Positions 17,251 through 63,470 of a DNA stretch of 64,000 nt are shown here, piece by piece. The DNA lies in IMG/VR virus record IMGVR_UViG_3300009537_002640, positions 142,496 through 206,495 of that record, one strand, 5' to 3'. The notes under the pieces were generated by a model. It was given only the letters and a program-made list of their open reading frames with translations, made no database searches and was not told where the DNA came from. How positions within the stretch are numbered: position 1 is the stretch's first letter; every line of letters begins with the position of its first letter. Made by a program: the position numbers and the translations under genes.

Positions 17251-17772
17251 CTAATCAGTTTCCATTAATTCCTCTTTCTTGTCTTTACGGTCCTTTCCAT
17301 CTATATCGTGATAGTCTAATAAACCATCAACATAATCTTCAGCCTTTGCAGGAGACTCGTCGCGCTTTTTATAATCCACCTGAGACTGAAATGCTTCCAT
17401 TTCTGTTTCTCTATCTAAATATTCTTTTTCCCCTTTATTAGGGTCAACATTGTCAGTGAATTGCTGAAGGAAGTGCACCAGTTCGTGCACCAGATAGTGA
17501 GTAGGATCCTGTCCCTTTTCTACTAGCTTCTTATTAATGTAAATCTTCTTGTCTTTAGTTTTTGCTGATACATCTAAATCAGCAAATTCTACAGGCACAT
17601 CATCTATCTTGGATAGCGGGACATTATACTTGTCAAATTTTTCTTTAACCTCAGGATCAGATTTTATCTTATCTTTCATCTTCTGAACCAGCTTGGTCCA
17701 ATCCGGTCCCGCCCTCTTCGAGATTCTGGTTATTGTCTGGTGTCTCTTCGACAGTTTGCGCATCTTTTTCAC
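17251..17772 (-). CDS. Zincin-like metallopeptidase (HExxH), 173 aa
   Basis: YLVHELVHFLQQ plus downstream ETEMEAF glutamate; GTG start, with an alternative ATG three codons later. Confidence 0.75.
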   Translation of the reverse strand: MKKMRKLSKRHQTITRISKRAGPDWTKLVQKMKDKIKSDPEVKEKFDKYNVPLSKIDDVPVEFADLDVSAKTKDKKIYINKKLVEKGQDPTHYLVHELVHFLQQFTDNVDPNKGEKEYLDRETEMEAFQSQVDYKKRDESPAKAEDYVDGLLDYHDIDGKDRKDKKEELMETD

Positions 17773-39960: not shown

Positions 39961-40114
39961 GAAAGTACCTCCAAAAATTAACCTACGGCTCTTCTGGTCG
40001 TATATTGGTCCGTCCCATAAGAGTCCATAGAGTATCAATTAGTTTTGATTTTCTTCGTCGGTATAACCGACAGGTGCACAACGAAGTCAAATCAGGTCTT
40101 ACAGAGAATCGAAA

Positions 40115-42556: not shown

Positions 42557-43087
42557 TTACCCTTCGTCTGTCGGTGCCTCGTCGAAAGGGGGGCCAGCCT
42601 CCTCTGCAAGTAGAGCTTCTAGTTCAGCATCTATGTTGTCTGCAGAATCATTCATGGCACTCAGTGTATCAGACATCTGGGTCACAACTCTTTTCGCTGC
42701 ATCAGTTAGAGAGTTAGCTACATCAGTTGCACCAACTTCTTCTGCAGCTTCAGCCATTTTTACTAGACGAACAACAGTATGAGCATATCTACCCACCAAG
42801 GAGCCGGTTGGGCTTTTATTCAACATTTCTATGAGCTTCTTCTGCTGCTCTACTTGATTTTCTACCAAGCCACCATCACCGCGAGCTTCTGCAACATAGA
42901 CTGGCTCTGGATGAGCCTCCTCTATTATGCTCTTCTCTGGCTGGTCTAGTCTCTTCTTTCGGATAGTTTCTACATCCTCTTGGTAAGGATTAGGCTCTGG
43001 TAATGCGGTCTTCTTAAGACCTAAGACATTAGTTTCAGAAGCAATCTTTAGAAACTCTATCATAACCTCGGAATTTTCCCAATTCAT
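42557..43087 (-). CDS. Internal head protein, 176 aa
   Basis: WENSEVMIEFLKIA N-terminal motif, AHP..VEN motif and helical-hairpin tag, each shared with neighbours. Confidence 0.7.
   Translation of the reverse strand: MNWENSEVMIEFLKIASETNVLGLKKTALPEPNPYQEDVETIRKKRLDQPEKSIIEEAHPEPVYVAEARGDGGLVENQVEQQKKLIEMLNKSPTGSLVGRYAHTVVRLVKMAEAAEEVGATDVANSLTDAAKRVVTQMSDTLSAMNDSADNIDAELEALLAEEAGPPFDEAPTDEG
42584..42603 (-). promoter_or_regulatory. Candidate -1 ribosomal frameshift site (AGGAGG, 7-nt spacer, C CCU UUC)
   Basis: X XXY YYZ heptamer in the 0 frame of the 176-aa ORF; the -1 frame is the open frame of the downstream 506-aa ORF. Confidence 0.5.
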
Positions 43088-43089
43088 AT

Positions 43090-43698
43090 TTAGCTCCTTG
43101 GCCCCATATATCCTTGGGGACCATAATTTTTCGGGTCTAGCGATGGGTCTTTTGGAAGAAACTGAAAAGCACCAGCCATCTCTTCACCCTTCTCTCTGGC
43201 ACCCTCTTCATTTCCACTAGTAAACATATCGTAAATTTCGCCTATCTTGGTAAAGCCAAAAGCAAACAGTAGATACTTAGCTGCACGCCAAAGATTCTTT
43301 AGTAGTGCTCGTGGACTTATAACATATTTCCATATGAACTTAAGCACCACACTTGCGAACGCTTCCTTTACTATCTGGTTTTCCATAGAACTAGCGATTT
43401 TGTTTATTCGTTCATCGTTTAGGTTGGCTGTTGCTGGCATTCCAAAAAGCTGTGTAGTAACACCTTGTTCATCGAGCCATCTACCAAAGTCCTCTAACCC
43501 ATATCCGTAATTAGATAAAACTTTATCAAGGGCAGTTATCATCATTCCGCTCCAACCGAAAACAGATGGGGCGTATGATATCAATCTAAAAAGATTTTGC
43601 CCGGGGCCTTGATCGGTTCTCCACATACCTTGAACCATTTTCTTTATGCCTTCTGCAACAAATGCTCGTTTTGAAATATATCGCATAGCTTTGTCCAT
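43090..43698 (-). CDS. Putative ejection/internal protein with hydrophobic helices, about 202 aa
   Basis: Start refined to 43698 (TAATG coupling); ISKRA and IVKEA motifs; hydrophobic segments. Confidence 0.6.
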   Translation of the reverse strand: MDKAMRYISKRAFVAEGIKKMVQGMWRTDQGPGQNLFRLISYAPSVFGWSGMMITALDKVLSNYGYGLEDFGRWLDEQGVTTQLFGMPATANLNDERINKIASSMENQIVKEAFASVVLKFIWKYVISPRALLKNLWRAAKYLLFAFGFTKIGEIYDMFTSGNEEGAREKGEEMAGAFQFLPKDPSLDPKNYGPQGYMGPRS

Positions 43699-45347
43699 TA
43701 TAGAATCGAATTGCGTCCCTGAAAACGGCCATAGTTCCTCTTTACATAATCTTGTAGCATAGGCATGCTCCAATCAGATGGAGGGGGCAGTCCTCTTGGT
43801 CCCTTAAATACCTGTGACACCAGTCGCACTTGATTCTCTCTACTAAAACCCCTATTAGCTAGCCAAGTTTGTGCCGGTGTTCCATCAATAAACTTGTTAT
43901 TGAGTGCAGCTAAAATTTCTGCACCTGTAGGGTTCCACTTATGAGGCTGCTCTTCAACATCATAGGTTCCGCCACCATACTGAACTCCAGTCTGTCGCTC
44001 TTGTGGAGCTGCACCAGGCTGAGTACTTTGTTGCACTGTCTGTGACAGAGTATTAACCTTTTGGCTTATAGCATTCAATACAGCAGGATTTTTACCAACT
44101 ACCCTATAGTCTGTTTGTGGCACATTCATCCACTGACGCAAACGAGGAGACGAATTCATAAATGTCTCCAGCGCCTTTTGAGTATTTGGTCCATAAATGC
44201 CGTCTTCATTGATTCTGCTTGCGCCAGTACTATATGCCTGGTTAAGATAGTTCAAAGACTGTTGCATGCTTGTTACGGCTGGATTCCTTCTGGACAATTG
44301 TCGCTGAGTCCTCTCTTTCTTAGCCGCTCCAGCTGGCCCCCTAAGAGTAACTTGAGTTCCGTCGCCAAGTGTTAGAGCGCGTTTAGACAACCGCTCCTTA
44401 GAGCTTGCTGTAGTAGCAGCAGTGCCTAAGGCTTTTTCAAACAAGCCATGAAGCATAACTAAACTCTGAACGTTGTTCTTAACATCTTCAAGAGTTGCAC
44501 TCTTTGATGCCAACGCTTCTGCCAAGTTGTATCCTGCTTCTTCGCTCTTATTATCGAATTTAGGAGGTCCGCCAAAGCGCTCAGAAAGCTGGTCATACAT
44601 AGATTTTACTTTCTGCCCAAGCTCAGCAAGGTCCTTATTTAAAGTCTGCCCATATTCCTCGACAGCTTTCTGCATAACGGCCTTTTGTTCAGATGCTGCT
44701 TTTTCTTTTAGCTGTAACATAGCAGTTAGTGTCTTATCAATTGCCTGTTCAGCCTGCTCAGCATCACCAGATATCAAACCACCATAACCCCAATCGGTAA
44801 GTTTTGGCTTCAATTGCGTAGGAAACCACTCCTTAAGGCTAACAAGATACTTTGTAAGTTCTGTTAGAGCATTAAGCTTACCTTTGGTTTGTTGAAGTTT
44901 CTCTTCCTCAGACTCAGGAACATCCTGAACGCCCATAGCCGCCTTAAACTCTTTTAGTTTGCCGGTGACTTTTTCTATCTGAGCTTTGGTTTGTTCGTCC
45001 TTAGGATCTAAGTCCTCAAACCTTTCCACTAAATCATCCAAATTATCATCAGCCAGCTTAGTAGCCTGCCAAACAATAGTAGCTCCAAGAATAAGAGCCA
45101 TTGCCGCCCAGCCTGCTGGTCCTGCAGGAGCAAACATTCCAGCTACTGCAGCGGCTTTACCGGTGACACCAAGAGCTAATGCGGCTTTAGCAGCACCAAT
45201 AACTGCTGCCTCCGTAGCTACATTGCTTAATATAGCTTCGCCCCAGTCAGAACTAGCGGCTTCTTTCACTATAGCAGGGGCCATAGCAATACGCGCATAT
45301 TCCTGCATGATTTCGCTATTTTCAAACTGAGACATATAGCTCTCCAT
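43698..45347 (-). CDS. Putative ejection protein with membrane-like segment and peptidoglycan-binding domain, 549 aa
   Basis: FENSEIMQEYARIA motif; about 45-aa Ala/Gly hydrophobic stretch; VTSMQQSLN...DGIYGPNTQKAL PG-binding-1 signature; LSKRA linker. Confidence 0.7.
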   Translation of the reverse strand: MESYMSQFENSEIMQEYARIAMAPAIVKEAASSDWGEAILSNVATEAAVIGAAKAALALGVTGKAAAVAGMFAPAGPAGWAAMALILGATIVWQATKLADDNLDDLVERFEDLDPKDEQTKAQIEKVTGKLKEFKAAMGVQDVPESEEEKLQQTKGKLNALTELTKYLVSLKEWFPTQLKPKLTDWGYGGLISGDAEQAEQAIDKTLTAMLQLKEKAASEQKAVMQKAVEEYGQTLNKDLAELGQKVKSMYDQLSERFGGPPKFDNKSEEAGYNLAEALASKSATLEDVKNNVQSLVMLHGLFEKALGTAATTASSKERLSKRALTLGDGTQVTLRGPAGAAKKERTQRQLSRRNPAVTSMQQSLNYLNQAYSTGASRINEDGIYGPNTQKALETFMNSSPRLRQWMNVPQTDYRVVGKNPAVLNAISQKVNTLSQTVQQSTQPGAAPQERQTGVQYGGGTYDVEEQPHKWNPTGAEILAALNNKFIDGTPAQTWLANRGFSRENQVRLVSQVFKGPRGLPPPSDWSMPMLQDYVKRNYGRFQGRNSIL

Positions 45348-50760: not shown

Positions 50761-53700
50761 TTAGCGCCAATTAAGCTGTGCCAACTGCTCATTTAGGCTT
50801 GGGGCATTAACTGGTTCTGGACTTGCGGTAACAGTCATTGATTGACCGGCACCATCAGCTCCTACACGGGGTAGGGAACCGCCCTTCCTAGAATTGTAGT
50901 TAGCTACTACACGCTTATTTGACTCAAAAGCTGCGTCATCAAAGTTCATCAGCTGGTCAACGTATCCCTCAAGGGATGCCTGAGTAGAAGCGATTAGCCC
51001 CTTCTCCTGAGCCTGGAGACCTACTGCATACGCTCTGCGTAGCTTGGTCTTGTACTCTCCGTTGTCAGCTTCCTTCTTCTTAGAAGCAAACTCTTTGCTC
51101 AAGTCTGCACCGAAGCTACCAGTGTCAGGACCTTGTGCCCAGAACTTCTTCCAGTAAGAAGCTGCTGCTGAGTCAACCTTACCCTCAGCCACCAACCTAT
51201 CAACATCTTCAGCCTTGAGTGCGCCCTTAACAATTGCCTCTTGAATGAGAGCAGCTGCCTCACGCACATTTCTTGGGCCAGATTCAGCGACATCTCGCAT
51301 TACATCGTGAATCTCAGAAATGGTTTCAACATGAGCACCGTCTGTCTTGGTATGAGTTAGCTCAGTTGTAGTACCCTTTCCGCCTGGATGAGCCTCAAAG
51401 TACTCTTTCTGAGTTGCATTCTCTGCCTTGCCCAAATCCAACTCATACTTTCCAAGGATGTCACCTGCTTGAGCAAGAAGAGCATCACGCTCAGCCTTGC
51501 GAGCAGCCATTACAGAATCTAGAGCTTCGTCAACTGCGAAGTCACCATCATCTGCCATCATTGCCCCACCACATGACTCATCATGTGCATGGTCCTCGGC
51601 ACACATTGGTGCATCTGCATCATCCTCGTCTTTCTTCTTCTTTTTCTCATCCTTCTCATATTCATCTTCTTCATCCTCGTCGGACTCTTTATCCTTTGCG
51701 AGGTCAGGATGCGTAAGCTCGCCCTCTGGACCTTTTTCTTGCTTCTCTTCCTGCAGAAGCTTCATTAGAGAAGCCTCATCAGCATCAGTTAGAGCATAGT
51801 CCATCTCGTCGCCCATACCCATCATGTCCATATCACCCATAGCCTTAGCTAGAAGTGCAGCACGATTTTGAGCACGGACCCTTAGAGCTTGTTCTAGAAG
51901 TTCAGCAGCCTTCTTCTCGGCGTCAGACTTTTCGGACTTCTTATCTTCCTTCTCGTCCTCATCATCTTCATCCTCGTCTTTCTTCTTTTTCTTAGCTGCT
52001 TCTTTCTTCTTCTTATCCTCTTTGTCATCCTCATCTTTGTCTTTCTTGTCTGCCTTTTCGTCTTCCTTATCATCGTCTTTCTTCTTGGCAGCTTCTTTTT
52101 TCTTATCTTTCTTCTTCTTATCCTCTTTATCATCCTCATCTTCATCGTCGTCTTTCTTCTTCTTAGCCAAGACAACTTCAGCTTGAGCAAGTAGAGTCTC
52201 GCTGTCGGCTAGAGCTTGAACAGCTGCACTAAGAACACGGCCCTTAGTTTCACCATCAAGGTCTTCTGCCTTATCAAGAGCTTCGCTCACAAGAGCTAGC
52301 TCATCAGCAGACTCATCTAGGAGGGAGTGAACCTCCATAGCCTCATCGCGGAACGCTAGAGTTTGTTCCATTGGACTTTCGGAACCACCTTCGCCTTCCT
52401 CGTCGACCTTAACTTCAATGTCGACTAGTTTCTCACCACCCTCATCAACAGCCTTGCGGATGTCGTCTAGAGCAGTTTCAATCTTAGTGAGGCCAGCTTC
52501 TACCTTGCCCTTGAGATCAGGCTCATCTTCCTTCTTCTCTGGTGCAGGTGCTTCACCCTCAGGAGCTGCAGGAGCAGCTTCTGGTGCAGGTGCGTCTCCG
52601 CCTGGAGCTGGTGCTCCACCTGCTAGAGGGTCAGCTCCACCGGGAGCCAAAGGATCTTGAGCACCCTTTAGGAGATATGAAACCTCATCAAAGCCTTCGG
52701 TGCGGATATGGCGAATAATATCCTTTCCGTAGTCCTTGGAGCTTAGATAATCCCAGTTCTCATCAAGCTGGTCATCAAAGATTTCCTTGCCGGTTGCAGT
52801 TAGAATCAACTTGTCACCAGCATACACATCCCAACGGGATGCATCCTTGACTAGATTGCCTTGGTCATCAGCGACCTTGGTAAACTTTGCACGAAGGCGG
52901 GCACGCAACCACATCTTCTTTACTTTCTCGTCGCCAGGAACCATACCATCGGTACCGCCCATGTCGTAGATGCCTTGTAGGTGCTTATCTTCGTTATCGC
53001 GGATTTTGTCCGCTTCCTCTTTTGGATACTTTTCCTTGCCAGGGGTTGGCTCATTGATACCACCACCGCCTAGCCAGTAAGCGCGACGTCGTAGTCTACG
53101 CTCCTGTAGTTGAGCTTCAGTTAGCTTTCCATCTTCAGCTGCATCCTTGTCAGTCTTCTGAACCTGCTCTAGCAGTGCTTGACGGCGTAGTTTACGCTCC
53201 TCAATCTCTGCTTTCTTCTTGTCGGCTTTACCGCCGCCAAGATTGCGGGTTTCCCACGTTCTTCCTTCATCGCCTGGGTGAAGACCTTCGGATCCAGTTT
53301 CTAATGGCTCGCCAACCATTTGCTTATCTTCAGTGTCACGGATTTTATCCGCTTCTTCCTTCTCATACTTAGGCTTACCTGGAGTAGGCTCATTAATGCC
53401 GCCTCCACCTAGCCAATATGCTCGACGTGCTTTGGCACGGGCACGTAATCTCGCAGAATTCATATTGTCGTCCTCCTTAGAGACTGTTTTTAACTCATTG
53501 AATGATTTACTTAGTTTTTCTATCTTGGATCGAAGGAGACGTATTTCATTAAAAAGAACACCCAGGTTTCCGTCTCCCTCTAGACTAGCCAATCTCTGAC
53601 TAGGCTCGACTGATATTGGTGTAGTGGTAGTGCGATACGTACCTTCACCGTTGCCAGCCATTGGACTTACACTTGGCTCTGACCCACCACCAGTAGCTGG

Positions 53701-54789
53701 TAAAGCAGGAGGAGCCTCGTCTGTTTCAGTATTGCCGATGCCGAATTTGGCAGCTAATACCTCTTCGATTTTTTCTTTTAGAGCAGGGTTGGTTACAGCC
53801 TTCAATGCCGCGACCAATTCACCCATATCCATATTTTCTAGACCATGTATGGGTGAGCTTTTAGCCTCTACTCTTTTAGTCTTTTGTTCGAGTTTCATTA
53901 GCGTGTTAAGCTTAGTTTGCATTTCGTTGATGTTGTCAGCAAGCGCTTGTAGTTCAGTTGGGTTTACACAGGCACCAACTAGCAACTCGTCAATACGCTC
54001 TTGTTTTTGTTCAGCGTAATTCTGCAAGCTTGCGACTATTTGTCGGATTTTTGCCAGACCATCAGCGCCATTAACTACGAGGCTTAGCTCGATTGGGCTT
54101 AGGTCTAGGTTCACTTCGCCATAATTTGTGCGTCCACGAACATGATGACAATAGTCTCGTTCGGTTCTCGCTACATGGCCACATTCGGTGCATACGGAGC
54201 GACCGACTGCCGTACCCATTGATACGCAATTAGCATATCCGGTTTCTACTTTGCGTGCTAGGTCAGGGTAATTCTTCCTATCTAACGCAAATAAAGCATG
54301 AACCCTCTTAAACTTAGGGTCATAGTAAGTATCGATTATTATTCCACGAATGCCGTCTACGCTATCACTCTTGTGGTCTTTGCATAGTGGCTTTCCTACC
54401 CAGTTCTTGTAGGCTTTTAGCAGCTCATCTTCAGGAAAAATGTCACCATTAGCATTCTTGTAGGGCTTTAGTCCATCAGGAGATTCCCATTTCACAGAGT
54501 GCTCGTTGCCCTTTACCTTAATAGGCACGAAAGACCCCTTAGCTGGCTTACCATTAGAAGCTAGAACGGGCTCACCTGTATCCTGGTCTATCAAACATGC
54601 TTCAGCAGCATGCATCATAATAGCGTGGCCATAAAGAAAGTCACTAGCTCTTGGAGCAATCCTCTTTAGCTTCTTGGCTAACTTAACAAACCTTTTGGCG
54701 ATTTGTTCGTCCGCTAGAGCTTCTTTCGGTGTCATCAGATTTGTGTCTGGTGAAAAGCTTAGATTCTCTCCGATTTTCCTAATAGCCAT
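50761..54789 (-). CDS. Prohead (maturation) protease fused to a large scaffold region, 1342 aa
   Basis: N-terminal HK97/herpes-type protease signatures: NGDIFPEDEL, KPLCKDH (H139), VSMG (S190), CTECG..YCHH zinc site, IELSLV..GAD; then about 1000 aa of acidic, K/D/E-rich and coiled-coil sequence. Confidence 0.85.
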   Translation of the reverse strand: MAIRKIGENLSFSPDTNLMTPKEALADEQIAKRFVKLAKKLKRIAPRASDFLYGHAIMMHAAEACLIDQDTGEPVLASNGKPAKGSFVPIKVKGNEHSVKWESPDGLKPYKNANGDIFPEDELLKAYKNWVGKPLCKDHKSDSVDGIRGIIIDTYYDPKFKRVHALFALDRKNYPDLARKVETGYANCVSMGTAVGRSVCTECGHVARTERDYCHHVRGRTNYGEVNLDLSPIELSLVVNGADGLAKIRQIVASLQNYAEQKQERIDELLVGACVNPTELQALADNINEMQTKLNTLMKLEQKTKRVEAKSSPIHGLENMDMGELVAALKAVTNPALKEKIEEVLAAKFGIGNTETDEAPPALPATGGGSEPSVSPMAGNGEGTYRTTTTPISVEPSQRLASLEGDGNLGVLFNEIRLLRSKIEKLSKSFNELKTVSKEDDNMNSARLRARAKARRAYWLGGGGINEPTPGKPKYEKEEADKIRDTEDKQMVGEPLETGSEGLHPGDEGRTWETRNLGGGKADKKKAEIEERKLRRQALLEQVQKTDKDAAEDGKLTEAQLQERRLRRRAYWLGGGGINEPTPGKEKYPKEEADKIRDNEDKHLQGIYDMGGTDGMVPGDEKVKKMWLRARLRAKFTKVADDQGNLVKDASRWDVYAGDKLILTATGKEIFDDQLDENWDYLSSKDYGKDIIRHIRTEGFDEVSYLLKGAQDPLAPGGADPLAGGAPAPGGDAPAPEAAPAAPEGEAPAPEKKEDEPDLKGKVEAGLTKIETALDDIRKAVDEGGEKLVDIEVKVDEEGEGGSESPMEQTLAFRDEAMEVHSLLDESADELALVSEALDKAEDLDGETKGRVLSAAVQALADSETLLAQAEVVLAKKKKDDDEDEDDKEDKKKKDKKKEAAKKKDDDKEDEKADKKDKDEDDKEDKKKKEAAKKKKKDEDEDDEDEKEDKKSEKSDAEKKAAELLEQALRVRAQNRAALLAKAMGDMDMMGMGDEMDYALTDADEASLMKLLQEEKQEKGPEGELTHPDLAKDKESDEDEEDEYEKDEKKKKKDEDDADAPMCAEDHAHDESCGGAMMADDGDFAVDEALDSVMAARKAERDALLAQAGDILGKYELDLGKAENATQKEYFEAHPGGKGTTTELTHTKTDGAHVETISEIHDVMRDVAESGPRNVREAAALIQEAIVKGALKAEDVDRLVAEGKVDSAAASYWKKFWAQGPDTGSFGADLSKEFASKKKEADNGEYKTKLRRAYAVGLQAQEKGLIASTQASLEGYVDQLMNFDDAAFESNKRVVANYNSRKGGSLPRVGADGAGQSMTVTASPEPVNAPSLNEQLAQLNWR

Positions 54790-56400: not shown

Positions 56401-57177
56401 TTATCGAGTCGAATCCCCGTAAGGACTCTCTAAATTACCATACCCGCTGTAAAAATAGGCATCGCTAAAGCCTTGAAACATACCAGCATTCTGATTATCA
56501 GTCACTCCTGTGCCAACTCTACCGTTAGAGCGAACCAAATCATCTAGCCCGTCTAGTGCCTCATCTGAGTTGTAGTACTCTGCCATCTCTTCTAACTCTT
56601 CGTCAGTCAATTCTGGCTCAGGAGGCATATTTTCAAGTGCCTCTAGCTCTTCTTCAGTATACTCTTTAACAGCATTATCCAACTCAGTGGCTTCTTCAAA
56701 TCGACCTTTTTCATCTAAGTCAGATGCTATTTGTAGAAGCCTAGCAGCTAATCGTGCAGATTCTGGTACATTAAACATACTATAACCTCCGCCTGTGCCA
56801 TCTCCACCTATATAACCCTGATTTTCAACGTTAGATTGCTCTTCCGGAATATAATCGGATGTCAAATCCTCTAAAGATGAGTCAATTGCTGCCATTGTAT
56901 CATAAAGAACCTTTGCCTTATCTATGAATCCGGCTTCTTCCAGATACTTAGCAAGGTCTGAAAGCTTAGACAAAGTGTGGGTTTCGGCATCCATACTATC
57001 ATTAGCATCGTCGTCTTTGTGTTTAAAGTACTCTACCTGCTGCTCTCTCTTTTCAGCCTGGCCACGGGAACTATAAGGGCCGCCAAGCTGTTTACGCTTG
57101 CCGTCCTTACCCTTCTTTCGAGAGAATAGCACGTATCCTTTGTCGGTTTTCCTAATGATTGCTGTTTTTATTAGCAT
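56401..57177 (-). CDS. Putative internal head protein with two hairpin tags, 258 aa
   Basis: LIKTA N-terminus, small basic domain (GYVLFS..KQLGGPY.SRGQAEKREQQVEYFKH), two copies of the tag. Confidence 0.65.
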   Translation of the reverse strand: MLIKTAIIRKTDKGYVLFSRKKGKDGKRKQLGGPYSSRGQAEKREQQVEYFKHKDDDANDSMDAETHTLSKLSDLAKYLEEAGFIDKAKVLYDTMAAIDSSLEDLTSDYIPEEQSNVENQGYIGGDGTGGGYSMFNVPESARLAARLLQIASDLDEKGRFEEATELDNAVKEYTEEELEALENMPPEPELTDEELEEMAEYYNSDEALDGLDDLVRSNGRVGTGVTDNQNAGMFQGFSDAYFYSGYGNLESPYGDSTR

Positions 57178-57184
57178 ATCGCAC

Positions 57185-57553
57185 TTATTCCTTAGTTTCC
57201 GGTGTTAATCGTTTATCTCGTATATCTTTAGATACTTCTTTCCAGGCTGGCTGTAATACTATAATGTCGTGCTGGCCATTTTGTCTGATAGCCGCCACAA
57301 AGAAAAATGTCTTAGACTTTCTTATTTCCGCTTTTTCGCCAGAACGCAAAGTGAATCTAGTTAATGGCTCAGCATTAGCATAGTCCCAAGCCATTATCTC
57401 GTGTATATCTCTTTTTTTTAACCCTTGCATTTTAGGGTCGTTTGCAAATAGTCTTTGCCAATATTCACGCGCAGAACGGCTTACACCTACACCAGCACTG
57501 GTAGGGGTAAACACGCCGCATTTGTAAATATCGTGTCGAATAGATAACATCAT
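57185..57553 (-). CDS. Hypothetical protein, about 122 aa
   Basis: Start refined to 57553 (ATGA overlap). Confidence 0.5.
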   Translation of the reverse strand: MMLSIRHDIYKCGVFTPTSAGVGVSRSAREYWQRLFANDPKMQGLKKRDIHEIMAWDYANAEPLTRFTLRSGEKAEIRKSKTFFFVAAIRQNGQHDIIVLQPAWKEVSKDIRDKRLTPETKE

Positions 57554-58260
57554 TTTCCAACTAGTCGCAAAAATCTCTCTATCTTGTGTGATGGAATGCA
57601 TATCCCTAAATGGTCAAATGCTGTATGCCCCATGGAAAGTAGACCTATAACCTCTCCGCTATCATTGAATACAGGGCTACCGGAGTTTCCTCCTGCTGCC
57701 GCTGCCGATATGATAAGCCTATCTCGGATTAATGGAGTAACATCTTTTGACGGATTGATAACCACACCAGGCTCTTCATACATCATAAACCCCAATGGTG
57801 CGCCCACTAACATCACTTTGTCTTTTCGCTTCACTGTACTATAGTCAGCGAACTTAACAGGCTTTAGATTATGCTTTGGTAGTCTCATCAAACAAAGGTC
57901 GTTTGATTCATCCATCTCCAGCATCTCTACGCCGTTTCGTTGTATCTCTACATCTTCTAGTAGATACGTTAACTTGATATTGTCTTCTAGTATGTCCATT
58001 ACTTGAAGCTCAAATATAGCAACACAGACATGACCAGCTGTTATTAAATGGTCTTCATCATAAGCAAAAGCAGTTCCGTTGATCTCGTTAACACTTTTTC
58101 TCGCTTTTACTGAAACCATGCCCACTGAGCGGGCAAGGTTGGTTGGCAAATCCTCTCTTCTAGCTTCCTCTTGCTGAGTAACTACTACTGGCTCGGGAGC
58201 ATGTACATTTATAGAACACCCCGTAAGCATTAACACTAGTAGCACAAAGATGCGTTTCAT
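57550..58260 (-). CDS. Lipoprotein trypsin-fold (S1/HtrA-like) serine protease, 236 aa
   Basis: MKRIFVLLVLMLTG-C lipobox signal; TAGH, DLCL and GNSGSP catalytic triad motifs; no PDZ domain. Confidence 0.88.
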   Translation of the reverse strand: MKRIFVLLVLMLTGCSINVHAPEPVVVTQQEEARREDLPTNLARSVGMVSVKARKSVNEINGTAFAYDEDHLITAGHVCVAIFELQVMDILEDNIKLTYLLEDVEIQRNGVEMLEMDESNDLCLMRLPKHNLKPVKFADYSTVKRKDKVMLVGAPLGFMMYEEPGVVINPSKDVTPLIRDRLIISAAAAGGNSGSPVFNDSGEVIGLLSMGHTAFDHLGICIPSHKIERFLRLVGK

Positions 58261-58886
58261 TCGTCTGAGGAACGCTCTTTGGTTTTTGCCATTGTATCTA
58301 ACATGTCATCAAACTGACTAGCTAGTTTGGTGTCTCCTTGCTCATCTAAAAAGCTTGCAATTGAAACCAGGTCCTCTGGTTGCATCCTTAAGCCTACTCG
58401 CTGAGCCAGGTCAGCCACTACTTCATCAATAGCCCTGGCCTCGTCATAAAGACCATCCTTATCTAGCTTGTAAGCAACTTTGAATAATTTAGCTAACATG
58501 GAATCCCTCCTTAAACTAGATTCTTTTTCTAACTCCTTCTGAAGCTCAATTTCCTTCTTCAGCAAGAATGATAGACGTTTTGCCTCTTCTTCTGTTATAT
58601 CATCTCTTTCCTTTAGGCGATGTATGTTCTCTGCAACCTCATCGAGTTGCTTTCGTGTTCGTTCTTTGGATGCCTTCTTTTCTGGAACTCGGTCCCGTTT
58701 AGATATTTGCTTTCTTTTCTTTTCAGTGAGATTATGAAACCATATATCTCCTATAGTGGCAGCTATCTGTTCCTCAGAGTACTCAGGAGAGTTTTTCTTT
58801 ATCTCCTTTTTCATCTTATCAAACCACTTCTTAGGTGGGCGTTGTTTCTTTTGAGATTTTTCTTTTGCAATTACCCGTTGAGTCAT
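58257..58886 (-). CDS. Basic helical protein with two hairpin tags, about 209 aa
   Basis: Start refined to 58886 (AAGGAG RBS); LFKVAYKLDKDGLYDEARAIDEVV and LVSIASFLDEQGDTKLASQFDDML. Confidence 0.65.
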   Translation of the reverse strand: MTQRVIAKEKSQKKQRPPKKWFDKMKKEIKKNSPEYSEEQIAATIGDIWFHNLTEKKRKQISKRDRVPEKKASKERTRKQLDEVAENIHRLKERDDITEEEAKRLSFLLKKEIELQKELEKESSLRRDSMLAKLFKVAYKLDKDGLYDEARAIDEVVADLAQRVGLRMQPEDLVSIASFLDEQGDTKLASQFDDMLDTMAKTKERSSDE

Positions 58887-58897
58887 TTGAAAGCTCC

Positions 58898-59218
58898 TTA
58901 TACAATATCTCGTGTCTTTCCGTTTCGTGGACGGCCATAGTGAACAGTAGAGGTGGTGCTGTCGCTTAGGCGGAAGCCAGAACCTACTTCCCAAAACATT
59001 TTGACAAAATCTTCGCTTATGTAAAACTCATTACCTTTATCGTTCCTAAGCTTTAGAATACCACAGTCTTCATCGTAATCTATAGGGGTAGCGATAACGA
59101 TTGTGTAGGACTGTGCATCACCATCAGCATAAGATAGCCACTCAGAATCCAGGTCGATAAAAAGCTCTAACTTCTTGTTAAGAAAGTTAGTAGCTATGAA
59201 TTTGCCATTTTTTGCCAT
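58898..59218 (-). CDS. Small beta-rich hypothetical protein (possible Sm-like barrel), 106 aa
   Basis: GAGG RBS; beta-strand pattern only, fold call tentative. Confidence 0.55.
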   Translation of the reverse strand: MAKNGKFIATNFLNKKLELFIDLDSEWLSYADGDAQSYTIVIATPIDYDEDCGILKLRNDKGNEFYISEDFVKMFWEVGSGFRLSDSTTSTVHYGRPRNGKTRDIV

Positions 59219-59230
59219 TTTAATCCTCTA

Positions 59231-59629
59231 TTAAGTATTGTATCGGGCTTTTCCACGAGTACCAACATATTTTAGTCGTATATGTCTATTGGACGCATCA
59301 ACTTCCCAAATTGCCGCATAAGCTGATCTTCCGCCTGTTAAATGACAATGAAAGAGTCCAGAAGATAATAGTTTACTAAAGTTAGGCCATTTATACAGGT
59401 ATGGACTTTTTTTCAGATCCGTAATAAGATTATGTGCAGTTTCTTGAATCCGCTTGGGCAATTTCGAAATCCCCTTTAATACTGACTTCGGAATATCCAC
59501 AGTCCATTCTTTTGCAGTTTCTGGGTCGGAAGAGTATGAAATTAATATCTCATCTATTTGATCAGCAATATCATAATATCCTAGTTTGTCTAGTCTATTA
59601 GCCACATTGCACAGTGTTTTCAAAAACAT
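59231..59629 (-). CDS. RelE/ParE-superfamily toxin-like domain with N-terminal hairpin tag, 132 aa
   Basis: WTVDIPKSVLKGISKLPKRIQ...FSKL...FHCHLTGG..YAAIWEV...IRLKYVGTRGKARY matches a RelE-like pattern; GGAGG RBS. Confidence 0.7.
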   Translation of the reverse strand: MFLKTLCNVANRLDKLGYYDIADQIDEILISYSSDPETAKEWTVDIPKSVLKGISKLPKRIQETAHNLITDLKKSPYLYKWPNFSKLLSSGLFHCHLTGGRSAYAAIWEVDASNRHIRLKYVGTRGKARYNT

Positions 59630-62600
59630 TATTCCCCTCCATTTCCCTGTATAGCTCTAGTCGTCCCGCTCGTTTTGACAAAGCTTTTGGTTTAGAGCTG
59701 GCAAATCTAGAATCCCTTTTGAGTTTAGCAACAGAATCATAAAACATTACCATCTCGTATGGAACGTCCAGTACGTTTCTATTATCCTCTATTCGTATGC
59801 TCTTATGTGGAGGCATCTTTTCAAGAACATTCTGTATTGTCTTCAAGTAGCTGTCTGAAAGTGCACCAGGAACATCAAAGGTAGAAAACATATCCATTTT
59901 AGCAACCCTCATCCAACCCTTAGATAATGCATCCTCATAAGTAGGTTCTTCGTCCGGACCAAAGTAACCAAAAAACTCTGGATGGTCCTTTATAAAGAGT
60001 ATATGTCCATTAGGCGCATCATAGAGCTTGCCATCCGGAGAAAACCACCAGGCATTGTAATCTGCTCGCTTAGATAGTGATTTCTTACCAAATGGAATAC
60101 GCTTCTTATTTCCACAGCTCCATACTTGAACATGGTTAGCTGTCCAAGAACCACTTGGTACTTCGCCATCGAACTTCTCTTTAGGTGGTTCCATGTATTC
60201 AAGTGTCACGTGAGGTTTGTAGGATGGAAAATGATCATCAACCTCTACGCCTGCTTCAATCAAAGCTTTTTTCAGTGCCTTGTGCAACTTATGTAACTCT
60301 TTGGACACCACAGCCATCTTAGCAATCTTACAATTATCAGAATGCTTGGTTGCAGGAAAGTAAGTCGGCTTCTTATCTAGTTCTAACTTTATAGGGCTAA
60401 AGTCCTTGATAACATCACGTACCACGCCATACACAGTCTCCTGCTTTTTCTCAGGCACATCTCCTATGTACAATACTGTTACATGAGTGGCGCTATCGTC
60501 GTGTTCGCCTAAAGAGGGAAATTGCTTAGACATGTCTTTTGGCAGAAGTATAAACACACCAGCACCATGTTTTCTGTCCTTTTTCTTCTCGTCTCTTTTA
60601 GAAAGCTTCTTTACGCCATCCCTAATTGATAGTGATTTCTTGCTTACCATTTCCTCTGCCCACTCTGGCAGTTCAAGCTCCATCTTATTAGGGTCTTTTA
60701 TGTTGCGTGCATTATTGGCGCTCTCTATGTAGTCAGGATAGTCCTTGTCCAAACCTAAGTCAAAGAAGGAATCAGGGTTGGTATCTACTAATTGAACTAT
60801 TGCGCCGCGACCAAGCTCAGGGAACTTATGATGTAAGTGATAGTAGAAGAATGCACGTGCATCTTGCTGAGACAAAGCCTCAGCTGCAGCTTCTAGTAAC
60901 TCCTTAAACTCATCTTCTTCGCGCTCATGATACTTGAATACAAAATAGAACTTGGCATTGTCCTCTAACATGTTTTTCAATGCAAGAGCCTCTTCCTCTG
61001 GGCATTCTTTATGTAGCCCGCGATAGAAGAATGCATCAGGGTCGTTCTCTGCTAATTGTTTAGCTTCGTTGTCGCTAACATCGTGAATATCGTGCTCTGG
61101 CTCTTCCTCGTCTCTGTGTCTAAAGATAGGAGCCTTCTCAAACCAGTCACCCATCTCATCATCTTCGCCATGACCCATGTCTTCGTCATTAAGCTCATTG
61201 TTGATTTCAAATATAAGGTCTGGCACAGTTTGATTGTGTGCTATTTTGAAAGCATCAGCAAACTTGCTAACTATTTCATTAGGCACACCAGATGCCACCA
61301 TGTCTTCATACAGATACGGAGCTATGGTTATTTGGTCATAGTACTCTGGCTCTGCATAAGCTCTACCCAAATACCTCTGCTTGGCACTCGTTAAAGCCTG
61401 TGGGTCGAACTTAGCTTCGTATATGTTGACATGAACAGCATTATTTACCGGCTCAATTTTAGCCGTCATTCTCACCGGGACATCTTTGTCTCCTGACAAT
61501 ACCTTTACCGCTCTAGCTATAGCATTTAGGTCTGCTCCAGAAACATCAAATGCTGTTCCCTTAAGGTGTGCTGGATGTTTCTCTGGCACTTTAGGCGGGC
61601 CAACTATGTAGCGAAATTGCTTAGTCAGAATCCTGGCCTTTTGTGCAGGGTCAGTTACAGTAGGGTAGTATATGTTAGCACGATATCTTTTCCACGCATT
61701 TTCAATGATTTTAGTCTGGTCTTCTAGTGTGCGAGAGCCAGAAGTTAAACGTGCCCCAGGTGGTAAAAATGGGCTTAGCATTGCCCATGCACTTAGTATA
61801 GTTTCATTAATCTTAGCCCTAGGAGAAATATTTAGTGCTTTCCTCTGATCCTCAGATAACTGCACTCCTCCCTCCTCTTTAGGAACAACACTTACAGATG
61901 GAGAAAGTTTCTCTTTCATTTCCCTAACTCTCTCTGTATGCTGCTCGGTTAGCGCCCTAACAGATAGTGATTGGCGCTTAACCATACGAGGCTGTTGTTT
62001 TTGATAAAGAGCGGCAACGAAATCTTTCATAGGAGGCATGACAACACTGCTGCCCAAAACTACATGAATAGCGTTATTGGCTGGCTCCACCAAAGAGCTT
62101 ATAACCTGAATAGAGCCAGGGAACGCTGCAGCAACCTCCATAAGGGTCTTATTAATGGCCCTAAGATTACTTCCAGTAATATCAAATGCTACACCTTCCT
62201 GATGTTCAGACTCGCCAACGAAAGCTATATCTGGTACCTGTACACCCTTAGGAGACTTATTCCTAATATAGCTTACCATTTGATTGAGGCGCCTCTTCTC
62301 TCTGCGATTAAAATCCTTGTCGTTTACGGCCTTCCAATACATTACTCTCAACTCTTGGTCTGTTATCCCAAGCTCTTTAGAGAAAGTAGTATGATAGACA
62401 CCCTGGTTTCGCTTCCACTCGCCAGGCTTACCAGCGTAACTTCTCCAGTACTCCAAAACTATCTTGGCCTGTTCACCTGCGCCACGATAAGCACTACTAA
62501 GGTATGTATTGTTTGGCATAAACGGAGCTATTATTCTCCATGCGCGTTCAATGCTTGGGGTTAACGTCGCGGACTCGTACACATTAGTGACGTTTTTATT

Positions 62601-63470
62601 AACGTCTACCAGTTGTGCATAGTTCTCCCATCGAGACGGGTCAGTTACCGGCGCGTTTACATCTACAGGTGGAGTAGGAGTATGCTTAATGGTGCTTACA
62701 GGAAGCTCTTCTTCCTCCATATATGATTGCGCTCGTATGCTAAAAGCCTTCTTTTCCTTTTTCTCTTCTTTACCTTCGTGCTTTTCTACAAGTTCAGGGT
62801 CAAGATACTGATTCTTGAGAGTAGAGGCTTTGTGACCAACTATATCTGCCACCTCCTCTAGTGCCTCTTTAAAATCCTTCTTCTTTAACATTTCCTTCAT
62901 AAGACGATTGGCGTGAAACCCTCGCAAATCTTTAGCGCTGATATCAAATGGTTTCAGATATCTATTAACGGCACGATCCCAAATCTTCTTACCATCGATT
63001 TCAAATATGAAGTCATCAGCCTTTTTACCCTTCATAAGGTCTCTGATAGCCTTAATAACCTCATTATTTTCAAGCACAACGTTTTGTTCCACTTCACCTT
63101 TTCCAGGAAAATCAAAAGTCATTTTCCCTGAGCCGCCCTTAACGTGCTTTACTTTAAGAGTAGATGCTCCGTAGGTTCCTTCACGAGCAGATTCCTCATT
63201 ACCAATGCGCATAGCTGTCTCATCCATAATTCCAACTATGGCTGCAATAGCTTTGGTTCGTTCATCATCGGACTTTAGGTCTTCGCGATACTGCTTACGC
63301 ACCTTATCAAGCTCTTTTTCCAACTTCTTGAGCTTATCTTTCTTCTCTTCCCAGCGCTTTTCAACATGCTTCTCGTCGTATACCCACACGTATCCCTTAT
63401 CGGTCTTCTTCTTTTCCTTGTAAGCCGGTTTGTCAGAGGTAACTTTTGCTCGTTTACTTAGCAGGTTCAT
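59598..63470 (-). CDS. Polyvalent polyprotein: DNA topoisomerase IB + two M15 Zn-peptidases + 4 helical repeats + 2H phosphoesterase + C-terminal domain, 1290 aa
   Basis: TopIB R88, K124, K180/R183, H213, Y222; M15 motifs S[AG]xR..H..G.AFD..H twice (H423/D430/H469 and H635/D642/H680); HVT996-998 and HVT1087-1089. Confidence 0.85.
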   Translation of the reverse strand: MNLLSKRAKVTSDKPAYKEKKKTDKGYVWVYDEKHVEKRWEEKKDKLKKLEKELDKVRKQYREDLKSDDERTKAIAAIVGIMDETAMRIGNEESAREGTYGASTLKVKHVKGGSGKMTFDFPGKGEVEQNVVLENNEVIKAIRDLMKGKKADDFIFEIDGKKIWDRAVNRYLKPFDISAKDLRGFHANRLMKEMLKKKDFKEALEEVADIVGHKASTLKNQYLDPELVEKHEGKEEKKEKKAFSIRAQSYMEEEELPVSTIKHTPTPPVDVNAPVTDPSRWENYAQLVDVNKNVTNVYESATLTPSIERAWRIIAPFMPNNTYLSSAYRGAGEQAKIVLEYWRSYAGKPGEWKRNQGVYHTTFSKELGITDQELRVMYWKAVNDKDFNRREKRRLNQMVSYIRNKSPKGVQVPDIAFVGESEHQEGVAFDITGSNLRAINKTLMEVAAAFPGSIQVISSLVEPANNAIHVVLGSSVVMPPMKDFVAALYQKQQPRMVKRQSLSVRALTEQHTERVREMKEKLSPSVSVVPKEEGGVQLSEDQRKALNISPRAKINETILSAWAMLSPFLPPGARLTSGSRTLEDQTKIIENAWKRYRANIYYPTVTDPAQKARILTKQFRYIVGPPKVPEKHPAHLKGTAFDVSGADLNAIARAVKVLSGDKDVPVRMTAKIEPVNNAVHVNIYEAKFDPQALTSAKQRYLGRAYAEPEYYDQITIAPYLYEDMVASGVPNEIVSKFADAFKIAHNQTVPDLIFEINNELNDEDMGHGEDDEMGDWFEKAPIFRHRDEEEPEHDIHDVSDNEAKQLAENDPDAFFYRGLHKECPEEEALALKNMLEDNAKFYFVFKYHEREEDEFKELLEAAAEALSQQDARAFFYYHLHHKFPELGRGAIVQLVDTNPDSFFDLGLDKDYPDYIESANNARNIKDPNKMELELPEWAEEMVSKKSLSIRDGVKKLSKRDEKKKDRKHGAGVFILLPKDMSKQFPSLGEHDDSATHVTVLYIGDVPEKKQETVYGVVRDVIKDFSPIKLELDKKPTYFPATKHSDNCKIAKMAVVSKELHKLHKALKKALIEAGVEVDDHFPSYKPHVTLEYMEPPKEKFDGEVPSGSWTANHVQVWSCGNKKRIPFGKKSLSKRADYNAWWFSPDGKLYDAPNGHILFIKDHPEFFGYFGPDEEPTYEDALSKGWMRVAKMDMFSTFDVPGALSDSYLKTIQNVLEKMPPHKSIRIEDNRNVLDVPYEMVMFYDSVAKLKRDSRFASSKPKALSKRAGRLELYREMEGNNVFENTVQCG

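What the first reader, a model, noticed from the sequence alone, without database searches (positions are those of the whole stretch)
59598..63470. Five-activity polyprotein with a repeated cleavage-like linker at most domain boundaries
Seen: TopIB (aa ~25-232), M15 peptidase 1 (~300-475), M15 peptidase 2 (~550-690), four ~30-aa helical repeats (~800-920), a 2H phosphoesterase (~968-1128) and an unknown C-terminal domain. A motif [LF]-S-[KIV]-R-[AD] occurs at the N-terminus (LLSKRA), after TopIB (FSIRA), after M15-1 (LSVRA), before 2H (LSIRD, LSKRD), after 2H (LSKRA) and near the C-terminus (LSKRA). It also occurs in other ORFs (LSKRA in the 549-aa ORF, ISKRA in the 202-aa and zincin ORFs). 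Established: large-phage prohead proteases cut internal proteins at short motifs (T4 gp21 at [IL]-x-E; phiKZ gp175 at [SAG]-x-E), and phage 'polyvalent' proteins combine unrelated effectors. Inference: a capsid-packaged precursor is cut into a toolkit of enzymes delivered with the genome.
Basis: partly seen in the sequence, partly recalled or inferred. Interest (0 to 1): 0.9.

Follow-up and report, generated by a model that had tools for sequence, protein, structure and literature searches.

The report
Multi-enzyme phage cargo protein with cut-marks
An uncultivated giant phage encodes one 1,290-residue protein that strings together a DNA topoisomerase, two cell-wall peptidases and an RNA-end repair enzyme, and a five-residue tag conserved between these modules in dozens of related phages suggests (not yet shown) that it is cut into separate enzymes delivered with the phage DNA.

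Summary
ORF 59598-63470 (-) encodes a 1,290-aa protein with TopIB, two VanY/LdcB-like M15 domains, four helical repeats, a 2H phosphoesterase and a well-folded domain of unknown function. The motif [IL]-S-x-R-[A/D] occurs 7 times against 0.09 expected.

In 48 homologues it occurs 189 times against 5 expected. It sits at domain-sized spacing, in disordered linkers and at homology breakpoints, as an island of conservation. Its codons vary, so selection acts on the protein.

The homologues keep the TopIB-M15 core and swap C-terminal modules: CCA/polyA polymerase, HD, RNA and DNA ligases, LigD phosphoesterase and primase-polymerase, ART-PolyVal. This is a polyvalent protein, encoded after the terminase and probable portal genes in relatives.

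The motif also heads unrelated small proteins, namely the p138 family and a membrane protein. It is present in tandem at the N-terminus of a conserved 173-aa zincin.

The prohead protease-scaffold fusion and the major capsid protein carry no copy of the motif. The neighbouring HtrA-like protease is missing from 6 of 10 syntenic loci. The zincin co-occurs with the motif wherever this could be checked.

Cleavage and packaging remain inferences. I rate this a new variant of a known kind.

The parts
59598..63470 (-). Polyvalent (multi-enzyme) protein, 1290 aa
   Evidence: ORF list and translation. 47 homologues with variable architecture.
62745..63350 (-). Type IB topoisomerase domain (aa 41-242). 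R88, K124, R183, H213 and Y222 are invariant in 29 homologues.
   Evidence: Pfam PF01028 E 7.5e-31. Invariant columns. PDB profile hits to TopIB.
61986..62633 (-). M15/LAS-type zinc peptidase domain 1 (aa about 280-495), with H-x6-D at aa 424-430 and a distal H at aa 469
   Evidence: VanY weak hit. VanY in 6/29 homologues. AlphaFold model and Foldseek hits VanY/VanXY/LdcB. Motif positions.
61365..61871 (-). M15/LAS-type zinc peptidase domain 2 (aa about 534-702), with SGxR at aa 577-580, H-x6-D at aa 635-642 and H680
   Evidence: Invariant columns T576 S577 G578 R580 Q585 H635 D642 H680. Model. Foldseek.
60684..61082 (-). Four helical repeats of about 30 aa (aa about 797-929). This is the best conserved stretch after TopIB (60-72% identity to relatives). 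Function unknown.
   Evidence: tblastn identities. All-helical model, pLDDT about 88.
60117..60506 (-). 2H phosphoesterase (LigT / 2',5'-RNA-ligase superfamily), aa 989-1118, with both H-x-T motifs
   Evidence: Pfam PF13563 E 3.5e-10 for the whole protein and 1.9e-11 for the isolated segment. H-x-T positions.
59670..60056 (-). C-terminal alpha/beta domain of unknown function (aa 1139-1267). It belongs to a widespread module family that is often repeated in tandem.
   Evidence: AlphaFold pLDDT 88.7, pTM 0.80. 336 representative clusters. No informative fold match.
63447..63461 (-). Motif copy 1, LSKRA, aa 4-8 (N-terminal)
62730..62744 (-). Motif copy 2, FSIRA, aa 243-247 (TopIB | M15-1 boundary)
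61953..61967 (-). Motif copy 3, LSVRA, aa 502-506 (M15-1 | M15-2 boundary), in a linker with pLDDT below 50
60591..60632 (-). Motif copies 4 and 5, LSIRD (aa 947-951) and LSKRD (aa 956-960), at the repeats | 2H boundary, in a linker with pLDDT below 50
60063..60077 (-). Motif copy 6, LSKRA, aa 1132-1136 (2H | C-terminal domain boundary)
59667..59681 (-). Motif copy 7, LSKRA, aa 1264-1268, 23 residues before the C-terminus
17251..17772 (-). 173-aa zincin (HELVH...E) with a tandem N-terminal motif (LSKRH, then ISKRA 10 residues later). Candidate processing protease or co-delivered cargo.
   Evidence: Pfam Peptidase_M91 26.4 bits (cut-off 25) and a weak eCIS_core hit. 140 homologues. 120/120 listed ones keep HExxH and 73/90 full-length ones carry the N-terminal motif. 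Co-occurrence.
50761..54789 (-). Prohead protease (aa about 100-240, His139, Ser190) fused to a scaffold-like tail of about 1,100 aa. It has no copy of the motif.
   Evidence: phrog_18299 E 1.3e-15. Sequence. Motif scans. Conserved RRAYWLGGGG element.
57550..58260 (-). HtrA/DegP-like S1 serine protease, 236 aa. An accessory gene, absent from 6 of 10 syntenic motif-bearing loci.
   Evidence: Pfam Trypsin_2 E 4.8e-15. PDB HtrA hits. Synteny.
57185..57601 (-). p138 family protein. The motif-like N-terminus MLSIRH is conserved in 9 of 10 orthologues.
43090..43773 (-). Hydrophobic 227-aa ORF whose likely start reads MRYISKRA
43698..45347 (-). 549-aa protein with LSKRA (aa 320-324) immediately before its peptidoglycan-binding / endolysin-like region

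Best explanation
This is a polyvalent cargo protein of an uncultivated jumbo myovirus. The source contig is 206 kb, and the closest major capsid protein among isolates is that of Bacillus phage G.

A constant core is followed by exchangeable modules. The core is TopIB, two M15 cell-wall peptidases and helical repeats. The exchangeable modules heal or seal nucleic-acid ends; here they are a 2H phosphoesterase plus an unknown domain.

Each module is bracketed by the short linear motif [IL]-S-x-R-[A/D/S/H], which lies in a disordered, lysine-rich linker. I propose that the motif is the recognition site of a phage-encoded endopeptidase. Cutting would release the modules as separate enzymes that travel with the genome into the next host.

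The same motif at the N-terminus of small proteins would mark the other members of this cargo set.

Among the proteases encoded here I favour the conserved 173-aa zincin, by a narrow margin (about 0.3). It has two motif copies at its own N-terminus, as expected of a self-activating zymogen. The prohead protease follows at about 0.25. The HtrA-like protease is effectively excluded as the general enzyme.

Shown: the domains, the motif statistics, its conservation at boundaries, and the co-occurrence patterns.
Inferred: cleavage itself, the scissile bond (after R or before [IL]), packaging in the capsid, and delivery.
For: Motif enrichment:
- 7 observed against 0.087 expected in this protein, 0 of 20,000 shuffles.
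- 189 against 5.0 expected in 48 homologues.
- 60 against 8.1 expected in an independent set found with the C-terminal domain.

Position of the motif:
- Spacing between copies is mostly 100-300 aa.
- BLAST alignment endpoints fall within 5 aa of a motif in 15% of cases, against 3% for random positions.
- The motif is kept at the same relative boundary in most homologues. For example, 13/19 on each side of the 2H domain and 27/37 upstream of M15-2.
- Motif columns are 0.7-0.9 conserved inside linkers that are 0.1-0.3 conserved.
- The linkers carrying copies 3 to 5 have pLDDT below 50.
- Ser and Arg codons differ between copies, so the constraint is on the peptide.

Module swapping between motif copies:
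- Homologue architectures vary.
- Second polyproteins without TopIB carry 7 copies each (L006, L014).
- In L009 a 2H module is inserted between two motif copies in front of the p138 domain.
- P0196 is a single domain bracketed by two copies.

N-terminal copies: 9/10 p138 orthologues and 73/90 full-length zincins.

Head-module position: directly after TerL and a portal-sized gene in relatives.

Zincin:
- HExxH is kept in 120/120 listed homologues.
- It is found on all four motif-bearing contigs long enough to judge: the window, the 481-kb contig, the 162-kb contig and the 53.6-kb contig.
- It was not found on the six contigs of 128-618 kb that carry TopIB without the motif, nor in 50,697 GenBank phage records.

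Precedent: Iyer et al. 2017 (PMC5512222) predicted that zincin peptidases process polyvalent proteins.
Against: - No experiment or proteome shows cleavage or virion packaging.
- Copies at the extreme termini would release only a few residues. Some homologues start MLSKRA, and some end ...ISKRD or ...LSKRAK. These copies fit a docking tag or a cassette remnant better than a cut site.
- The co-occurrence of zincin and motif is confounded by phylogeny, because one clade has both.
- The collection scan for the zincin used two fixed peptide patterns and can miss divergent copies.
- The zincin lies 42 kb away among tail genes.
- M91 and eCIS-core zincins are usually described as effectors or toxin-associated domains.
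- More distant zincins exist without the N-terminal motif.
- One boundary in this protein (M15-2 | repeats, aa about 700-780) has no intact copy. Relatives do have one there.
Confidence: 0.55

Rival explanations
1. The prohead protease of the protease-scaffold fusion (50761-54789) cuts the motif inside the prohead, as T4 gp21 and phiKZ gp175 do with internal head proteins.
For: - The protease domain is real (phrog_18299 E 1.3e-15; His139 and Ser190).
- It is conserved at about 55% identity in motif-bearing relatives. In the motif-less TopIB clade it is only about 30% identical.
- The polyprotein lies in the head module.
- N-terminal copies resemble T4-type capsid-targeting propeptides (established knowledge; reviewed in PMC5694885 and PMC10052503, listed).
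- The scaffold has a conserved R-R-A-Y-W element, present twice, in three genomes. This could be a related R|A site.
Against: - The [IL]-S-x-R motif has no copy in the 1342-aa protease-scaffold or in the major capsid protein of the window.
- The partial protease-scaffold homologues of L002 and L004 have none either.
- In T4-like and phiKZ-like phages the same motif is used on scaffold, capsid protein and cargo.
- The head proteins here share other recurrent elements instead.
Confidence: 0.25
2. The motif is a docking or packaging tag, or a flexible basic linker. It would recruit each module or protein to the scaffold, capsid interior, tail lumen or DNA, without being cut.
For: - Copies at the very N- and C-termini cannot release meaningful fragments.
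- N-terminal copies occur on single-domain proteins.
- The surrounding sequence is lysine-rich.
- eCIS-type cargo is known to use N-terminal loading signals (my knowledge, not tested here).
Against: - A docking tag does not need to sit at almost every inter-domain boundary, with an invariant Ser and Arg and a small P1'-like residue.
- Double copies 9-11 residues apart and free module shuffling are what polyprotein cut sites look like.
- The two functions are not mutually exclusive.
Confidence: 0.2
3. The neighbouring trypsin-fold (HtrA/DegP-like) serine protease at 57550-58260 cuts after the Arg of the motif.
For: - It is encoded three genes downstream of the polyprotein.
- It is syntenic in L002, L026 and L028, and lies on the contigs of P0002 and P0003.
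- The family keeps a conserved acidic residue (F-D-H) after the catalytic Ser, which could line an S1 pocket (inference).
Against: - It is absent between the flanking marker genes p245 and p138 in L004, L008, L009, L010, L012 and L014. Each of these carries 6-14 motif copies.
- HtrA-type enzymes usually prefer aliphatic P1 residues.
- It carries no motif of its own.
Confidence: 0.04
4. The motif is chance, low complexity, or a DNA-level recombination joint between cassettes, with no function as a peptide.
For: Modules are clearly shuffled at these points.
Against: - Enrichment is 38-fold to 80-fold over shuffles.
- Ser is encoded by AGT, AGC, TCT and TCA, and Arg by CGA, AGG, AGA, CGC and CGG, at different copies. 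No DNA sequence is therefore shared.
- The motif is kept as an island of conservation across proteins that are 35-70% identical.
Confidence: 0.01

Closest known systems
Polyvalent proteins of phages and conjugative elements (Iyer, Burroughs, Anand, de Souza, Aravind 2017, PMC5512222)
   Same: - Many unrelated enzymatic domains in one polypeptide.
- Architectures vary between relatives.
- The gene lies beside virion genes.
- Homologues contain the family-specific ART-PolyVal domain, 2H phosphoesterase and DD-peptidase-type domains.
- Processing by a zincin peptidase was predicted for the class.
   Different: - A discrete five-residue motif marks nearly every module boundary, and the N-termini of separate small proteins. 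I found no description of such a motif.
- The candidate zincin is a stand-alone gene, not an embedded MPTase domain.
- The constant module is a TopIB, which that paper mentions only once.
T4 gp21 / internal proteins with a capsid-targeting sequence, and phiKZ gp175 / SPN3US gp245 processing of ejection proteins
   Same: - Head-module cargo proteins.
- A short consensus site.
- N-terminal propeptide-like copies.
- Several different virion proteins share the site (PMC5694885 and PMC10052503, listed; established knowledge).
   Different: - In those phages the site ends in Glu and is also used on the scaffold and the major capsid protein.
- Here the site is basic ([IL]-S-x-R) and is absent from the scaffold and the capsid protein.
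- Those cargo proteins are mostly separate genes rather than one modular chain.
Viral polyproteins cut at short basic sites by a chymotrypsin-fold protease (for example the flavivirus NS2B-NS3 system)
   Same: One translation product is divided at repeated short sites, with Arg before a small residue, into independently acting enzymes (my knowledge; analogy only).
   Different: - The system here is unrelated and belongs to a DNA phage.
- The trypsin-fold protease is missing from most relatives.
Type IB topoisomerases, including the virion-packaged poxvirus enzyme and phage TopIB of some jumbo phages (PMC7824862)
   Same: - The catalytic core carries the R-K-R-H-Y set.
- A virion-carried TopIB has a precedent in poxviruses (my knowledge).
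   Different: - Here the TopIB is fused to peptidases and repair enzymes.
- Its packaging is not shown.
Peptidase M91 / eCIS-core (DUF4157) zincins
   Same: HExxH plus a downstream Glu. The Pfam M91 score is just above the curated cut-off, and there is a weak eCIS_core hit.
   Different: - The protein is small (about 140 aa when mature), phage-encoded and stand-alone.
- It has a tandem N-terminal [IL]-S-x-R motif.
- No solved relative is detectable by sequence.

Membership tests
Polyvalent proteins (Iyer et al. 2017) | Two or more unrelated enzymatic/effector domains in one polypeptide | tested here: met
   TopIB, two M15 domains and 2H.
Polyvalent proteins (Iyer et al. 2017) | Domain architecture varies among close relatives (module shuffling) | tested here: met
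   Homologues add PolyA_pol, HD, RNA/DNA ligase, LigD_N, LigD Prim-Pol, ART-PolyVal and tyrosine phosphatases.
Polyvalent proteins (Iyer et al. 2017) | Encoded among virion (late) genes, typically next to the portal | tested here: met
   In L002, L027 and L028 the order is TerL, a 655-677-aa gene (probable portal), a small gene, then this gene. L004, L006 and L026 follow the same order with extra or intein-containing genes. The window's contig ends 530 bp upstream.
Polyvalent proteins (Iyer et al. 2017) | Delivered into the host with the DNA | not testable with these tools
   Needs virion proteomics or an infection assay. The phage is uncultivated.
Type IB topoisomerase | Catalytic Arg-Lys-Arg-His plus nucleophilic Tyr | tested here: met
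   R88, K124, R183, H213 and Y222 are invariant in 29 sequences. Pfam E 7.5e-31. The assignment of these residues to the catalytic pentad is by position and from my knowledge of the family.
2H phosphoesterase superfamily | Two H-x-T/S motifs | tested here: met
   H-V-T at aa 996-998 and 1087-1089. PF13563 E 3.5e-10.
Peptidase M15 (VanY/LdcB-like, LAS fold) | Zn ligands H-x(6)-D and a distal His, on the LAS fold | tested here: inconclusive
   The sequence motifs are present in both copies and invariant in copy 2. The Pfam VanY score is below the cut-off in this protein (17.7-18.3 bits against 25), though significant in some homologues (best E 9.5e-7). The top Foldseek hits are all VanY, VanXY or LdcB, but E is about 0.09 and TM about 0.4.
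Substrates of a T4/phiKZ-type prohead protease | The same cleavage motif is also present in scaffold, protease and major capsid protein | tested here: not met
   No copy in the protease-scaffold (window, L002, L004) or in the major capsid protein of the window.
Substrates of a T4/phiKZ-type prohead protease | Cleavage demonstrated in virions | not testable with these tools
   No proteome is available.
Zincin metallopeptidase (for ORF 17251-17772) | HExxH plus a third ligand (Glu) | tested here: met
   H96, E97, H100 and E124 are invariant and E126 is nearly invariant in 30 sequences. HExxH is kept in 120/120 homologues. Peptidase_M91 scores 26.4 bits against a cut-off of 25.

The most novel reading that the evidence does not exclude
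A clade of huge phages uses one five-residue 'address-and-cut' tag, read by a dedicated small zincin that activates itself at the same tag. Any enzyme placed between two tags then becomes a separately released, genome-accompanying cargo. This would be a plug-and-play system for assembling injected toolkits, here topoisomerase, wall peptidases and RNA/DNA end-repair enzymes that may counter host nucleases. It would give polyvalent proteins a defined processing code for the first time.
Probability: 0.3. Interest if true: 0.8.

Novelty: new variant of a known kind. Interest (0 to 1): 0.62.

Why it matters
Polyvalent phage proteins were described in 2017 with the prediction that they are cut into active pieces. 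No cleavage code was given, so the idea has been hard to test.

Here the boundaries are marked by a simple, strongly conserved peptide, and three candidate proteases are encoded in the same window. The prediction therefore becomes a bench experiment: co-express and look for fragments.

If confirmed, the motif would allow the injected protein repertoire of uncultivated huge phages to be read directly from sequence. It would show which nucleic-acid repair activities those phages bring with them. It would also supply a portable linker-and-protease pair.

Tried and rejected
1. The HtrA-like S1 protease as cutter looked attractive because of the Arg at the putative P1 position. I rejected it as the general enzyme. 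Synteny shows it missing between markers p245 and p138 in 6 of 10 motif-bearing loci, and the 225-aa protein at that position in L004 is unrelated.

2. A DNA-level recombination joint is rejected by the varied codons.

3. Phage G as a model. Its major capsid protein is 53.5% identical. However, its first 45 kb has no motif cluster, it has no TopIB polyprotein and no zincin. The phage G multi-omics paper reports no cleavage sites.

4. A different repeated motif in the motif-less TopIB clade: none was found by k-mer counting.

5. Function of the C-terminal domain and of the helical repeats: no informative PDB or BFVD match.

6. Literature search for the motif letters and for packaged phage TopIB found nothing relevant.

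7. PADLOC gave nothing for the polyprotein or the zincin.

8. A solved-structure relative of the zincin: none by sequence.

9. The S1 pocket of the trypsin-like enzyme and the substrate cleft of the zincin could not be inspected, because the structure tool returns no coordinates.

Full report
**What is there**

The finding's coordinates hold one ORF, 59598-63470 on the minus strand, 1290 aa.

The whole 64-kb window is a minus-strand block of virion genes:
- a major capsid protein (38935-40038, phrog_2522, E 1e-78);
- a tail sheath-like protein;
- a 3811-aa giant protein;
- a 1342-aa protein whose N-terminus is a prohead protease.

The window is the end of a 206,495-bp metagenomic contig. Among isolates the capsid protein is closest to Bacillus phage G gp27, at 53.5% identity. 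The source is therefore an uncultivated jumbo myovirus related to the phage G lineage.

**Domains**

- TopIB is firm. Pfam gives E 7.5e-31, a profile of the homologues hits solved TopIB structures at E 1e-28, and R88, K124, R183, H213 and Y222 are invariant.
- The 2H phosphoesterase is firm. PF13563 gives E 3.5e-10, and both H-x-T motifs are present.
- The two M15 domains are moderately supported. VanY is weak here but reaches E 9.5e-7 in homologues. The H-x6-D and distal His motifs are conserved. An AlphaFold model of aa 247-960 (pLDDT 77) has VanY, VanXY and LdcB as its top Foldseek hits, at prob 0.97 but E about 0.09.
- The four helical repeats are real. Apart from TopIB they are the most conserved stretch, at 60-72% identity in relatives.
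- The C-terminal domain folds confidently (pLDDT 88.7). It belongs to a large family of often tandemly repeated modules, with 336 representative clusters. It has no informative structural relative.

**The motif**

Seven copies against 0.087 expected, with none of 20,000 shuffles reaching seven.

The decisive evidence comes from relatives. Forty-seven homologues plus further loci carry the same motif. The count is 189 copies in 48 proteins against 5.0 expected.

The consensus is a lysine-rich run followed by [I>L]-S-[K>I,L,V]-R-[A>D,S]. In other families H or Q can take the last position.

Several observations place the motif at module boundaries:
- Copies are mostly 100-300 residues apart.
- BLAST alignment endpoints cluster on them, 15% within 5 residues against 3% for random positions.
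- The same boundary keeps the motif in most homologues.
- In the alignment the motif columns are 0.7-0.9 conserved, inside linkers that are 0.1-0.3 conserved.
- The linkers around copies 3 to 5 are disordered in the model.

Codons differ between copies, so the constraint is on the peptide and not on the DNA.

One boundary of this protein (M15-2 | repeats) has lost the motif, though relatives keep it there.

**Modularity**

Homologues share the TopIB-M15-M15-repeat core. Their C-terminal modules vary:
- 2H phosphoesterase;
- CCA/polyA polymerase with an HD domain;
- RNA ligase and DNA ligase;
- LigD 3'-phosphoesterase and LigD primase-polymerase;
- ART-PolyVal;
- tyrosine phosphatases.

Some genomes encode a second or third such protein without TopIB, again with about seven motif copies (L006, L014, L027).

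In L009 a 2H module sits between two motif copies in front of an otherwise single-domain protein. P0196 is a single domain bracketed by two copies.

This is the polyvalent-protein architecture of Iyer et al. 2017 (PMC5512222). In relatives the gene follows the large terminase and a portal-sized gene.

**The motif outside the polyprotein**

In the window the strict form [LIF]SKRA occurs three more times. By scaling the shuffle rate, about 0.06 would be expected.

The additional sites are:
- the likely start of a hydrophobic 227-aa ORF (MRYISKRA);
- just before the peptidoglycan-binding region of a 549-aa protein;
- near the N-terminus of a 173-aa ORF.

A relaxed form also heads the p138 family. 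Nine of ten orthologues begin M-x(0-2)-[IL]-S-x-R-[HADQ].

The 173-aa ORF is a zincin, with HELVH plus a downstream Glu. Its Pfam Peptidase_M91 score is just above the cut-off. It has 140 homologues. All 120 listed ones keep HExxH, and 73 of the 90 full-length ones begin with two motif copies ten residues apart.

**Which protease?**

Three are encoded in the window.

(a) The HtrA-like S1 protease, three genes downstream of the polyprotein.
- It is present at the syntenic site in the window, L002, L026 and L028.
- It is absent there in L004, L008, L009, L010, L012 and L014, all of which are rich in the motif.
- It therefore cannot be the general enzyme.

(b) The prohead protease-scaffold fusion.
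- It is universal and well conserved.
- Neither it nor the major capsid protein contains a single copy of the motif, and the partial homologues in L002 and L004 have none either. This is unlike the T4 and phiKZ systems.
- The only hint in its favour is a conserved R-R-A-Y-W element, present twice in the scaffold.

(c) The zincin.
- It is found on every motif-bearing contig long enough to judge: the window, the 481-kb contig, the 162-kb contig and the 53.6-kb contig.
- It was not found on six motif-less TopIB contigs of 128-618 kb, nor in any of 50,697 GenBank phage records.
- It carries the motif in tandem at its own N-terminus.
- This fits a self-activating processing enzyme, and it matches the 2017 prediction.
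- The association is confounded by shared ancestry, and the zincin could equally be one more cargo protein.

I rank the zincin slightly above the prohead protease and leave the question open.

**Limits**

Nothing here shows cleavage, the scissile bond, packaging or delivery.

Copies at the extreme termini of some homologues would release only a few residues. They suggest that the motif also, or instead, serves as a docking tag, or that it travels with each module as part of a cassette.

**Comparison and novelty**

- The protein is a member of the polyvalent class.
- Its TopIB, 2H and probable M15 domains are members of their families.
- The processing logic resembles T4 and phiKZ cargo maturation and viral polyproteins, but it fails the T4-type test of a motif shared with scaffold and capsid protein.
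- I found no description of this motif, or of a motif-delimited polyvalent protein, in the searchable literature.
- I rate it a new variant of a known kind. It is of good interest because it turns a long-standing prediction into a simple experiment.

Noticed in passing
window 42557-43087, 43698-45347, 45347-46969 (all minus strand): Three consecutive head-module proteins (176, 549 and 540 aa) have paralogous N-termini of the form x-[NDE]-S-E-[VI]-M-x-E-[FY]-x-x-I-A. This looks like a shared targeting or propeptide sequence that is distinct from the [IL]SKRA motif.
   Followed up: no
window 45347-46969, 50761-54789 and, more weakly, 42557-43087: A conserved block of about 25 aa, AHPGG..T.ELTH.KTD...VETI.E, is shared by the 540-aa protein and the protease-scaffold protein, with a weaker copy in the 176-aa protein. 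It ends in [LIV]-x-E strings, the kind of site T4-type prohead proteases cut. It may be the real prohead-protease site.
   Followed up: no
window 45347-46969, 46983-48014, 56401-57177, 58257-58994, 59231-59629: A second recurrent element, L-x-x-L-D-x-x-G-x-x-x-E-A-x-x-x-D, occurs in at least five small head-module proteins here. It also occurs in proteins of L004 and L014. It may be a scaffold- or capsid-binding helix pair.
   Followed up: partly
window 50761-54789: The protease-scaffold fusion has a tandem duplication of about 40 aa containing RRAYWLGGGG[IV]NEPTPGK, conserved in L002 and L004. It also has long stretches of alternating acidic and basic low complexity.
   Followed up: partly
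window 59231-59629: The 132-aa ORF overlaps the 3' end of the polyprotein gene. Its C-terminal half is RelE-like (phrog_32175 E 4.9e-7; RelE-like toxin phrog_1213 E 3e-3).
   Followed up: no
window 5801-17236: A 3811-aa giant protein lies directly downstream of the zincin. It gives only weak hits (phrog_14293; endosialidase-like tail-spike fragment) and has a single relaxed motif copy, ISLRD, at about aa 980.
   Followed up: no
L004 6613-9753, L006 4915-9291, L026 2934-7331: In several relatives the portal-position gene is enlarged to 1046-1465 aa by intein / LAGLIDADG homing-endonuclease insertions.
   Followed up: no
L002, L004, L006, L027, L028, upstream of TerL: Stand-alone PolyA_pol/CCA-adding genes, DUF5661 genes and DNA/RNA ligase genes lie just upstream of the terminase in relatives. 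The same activities therefore occur both as free genes and as polyprotein modules.
   Followed up: no
P0183, P0188, P0197, P0202 and others: The C-terminal domain family (W-W-x-S-P-x-G-x-x-Y...H..F...GWIR) occurs in up to 10 tandem copies in large proteins that lack the [IL]SKRA motif. It is a widespread repeat module of unknown function.
   Followed up: partly
window 38935-40038: The major capsid protein ORF has an N-terminal extension of about 44 aa relative to phage G gp27 as annotated. It contains no [IL]SKRA motif, and whether it is removed is unknown.
   Followed up: no
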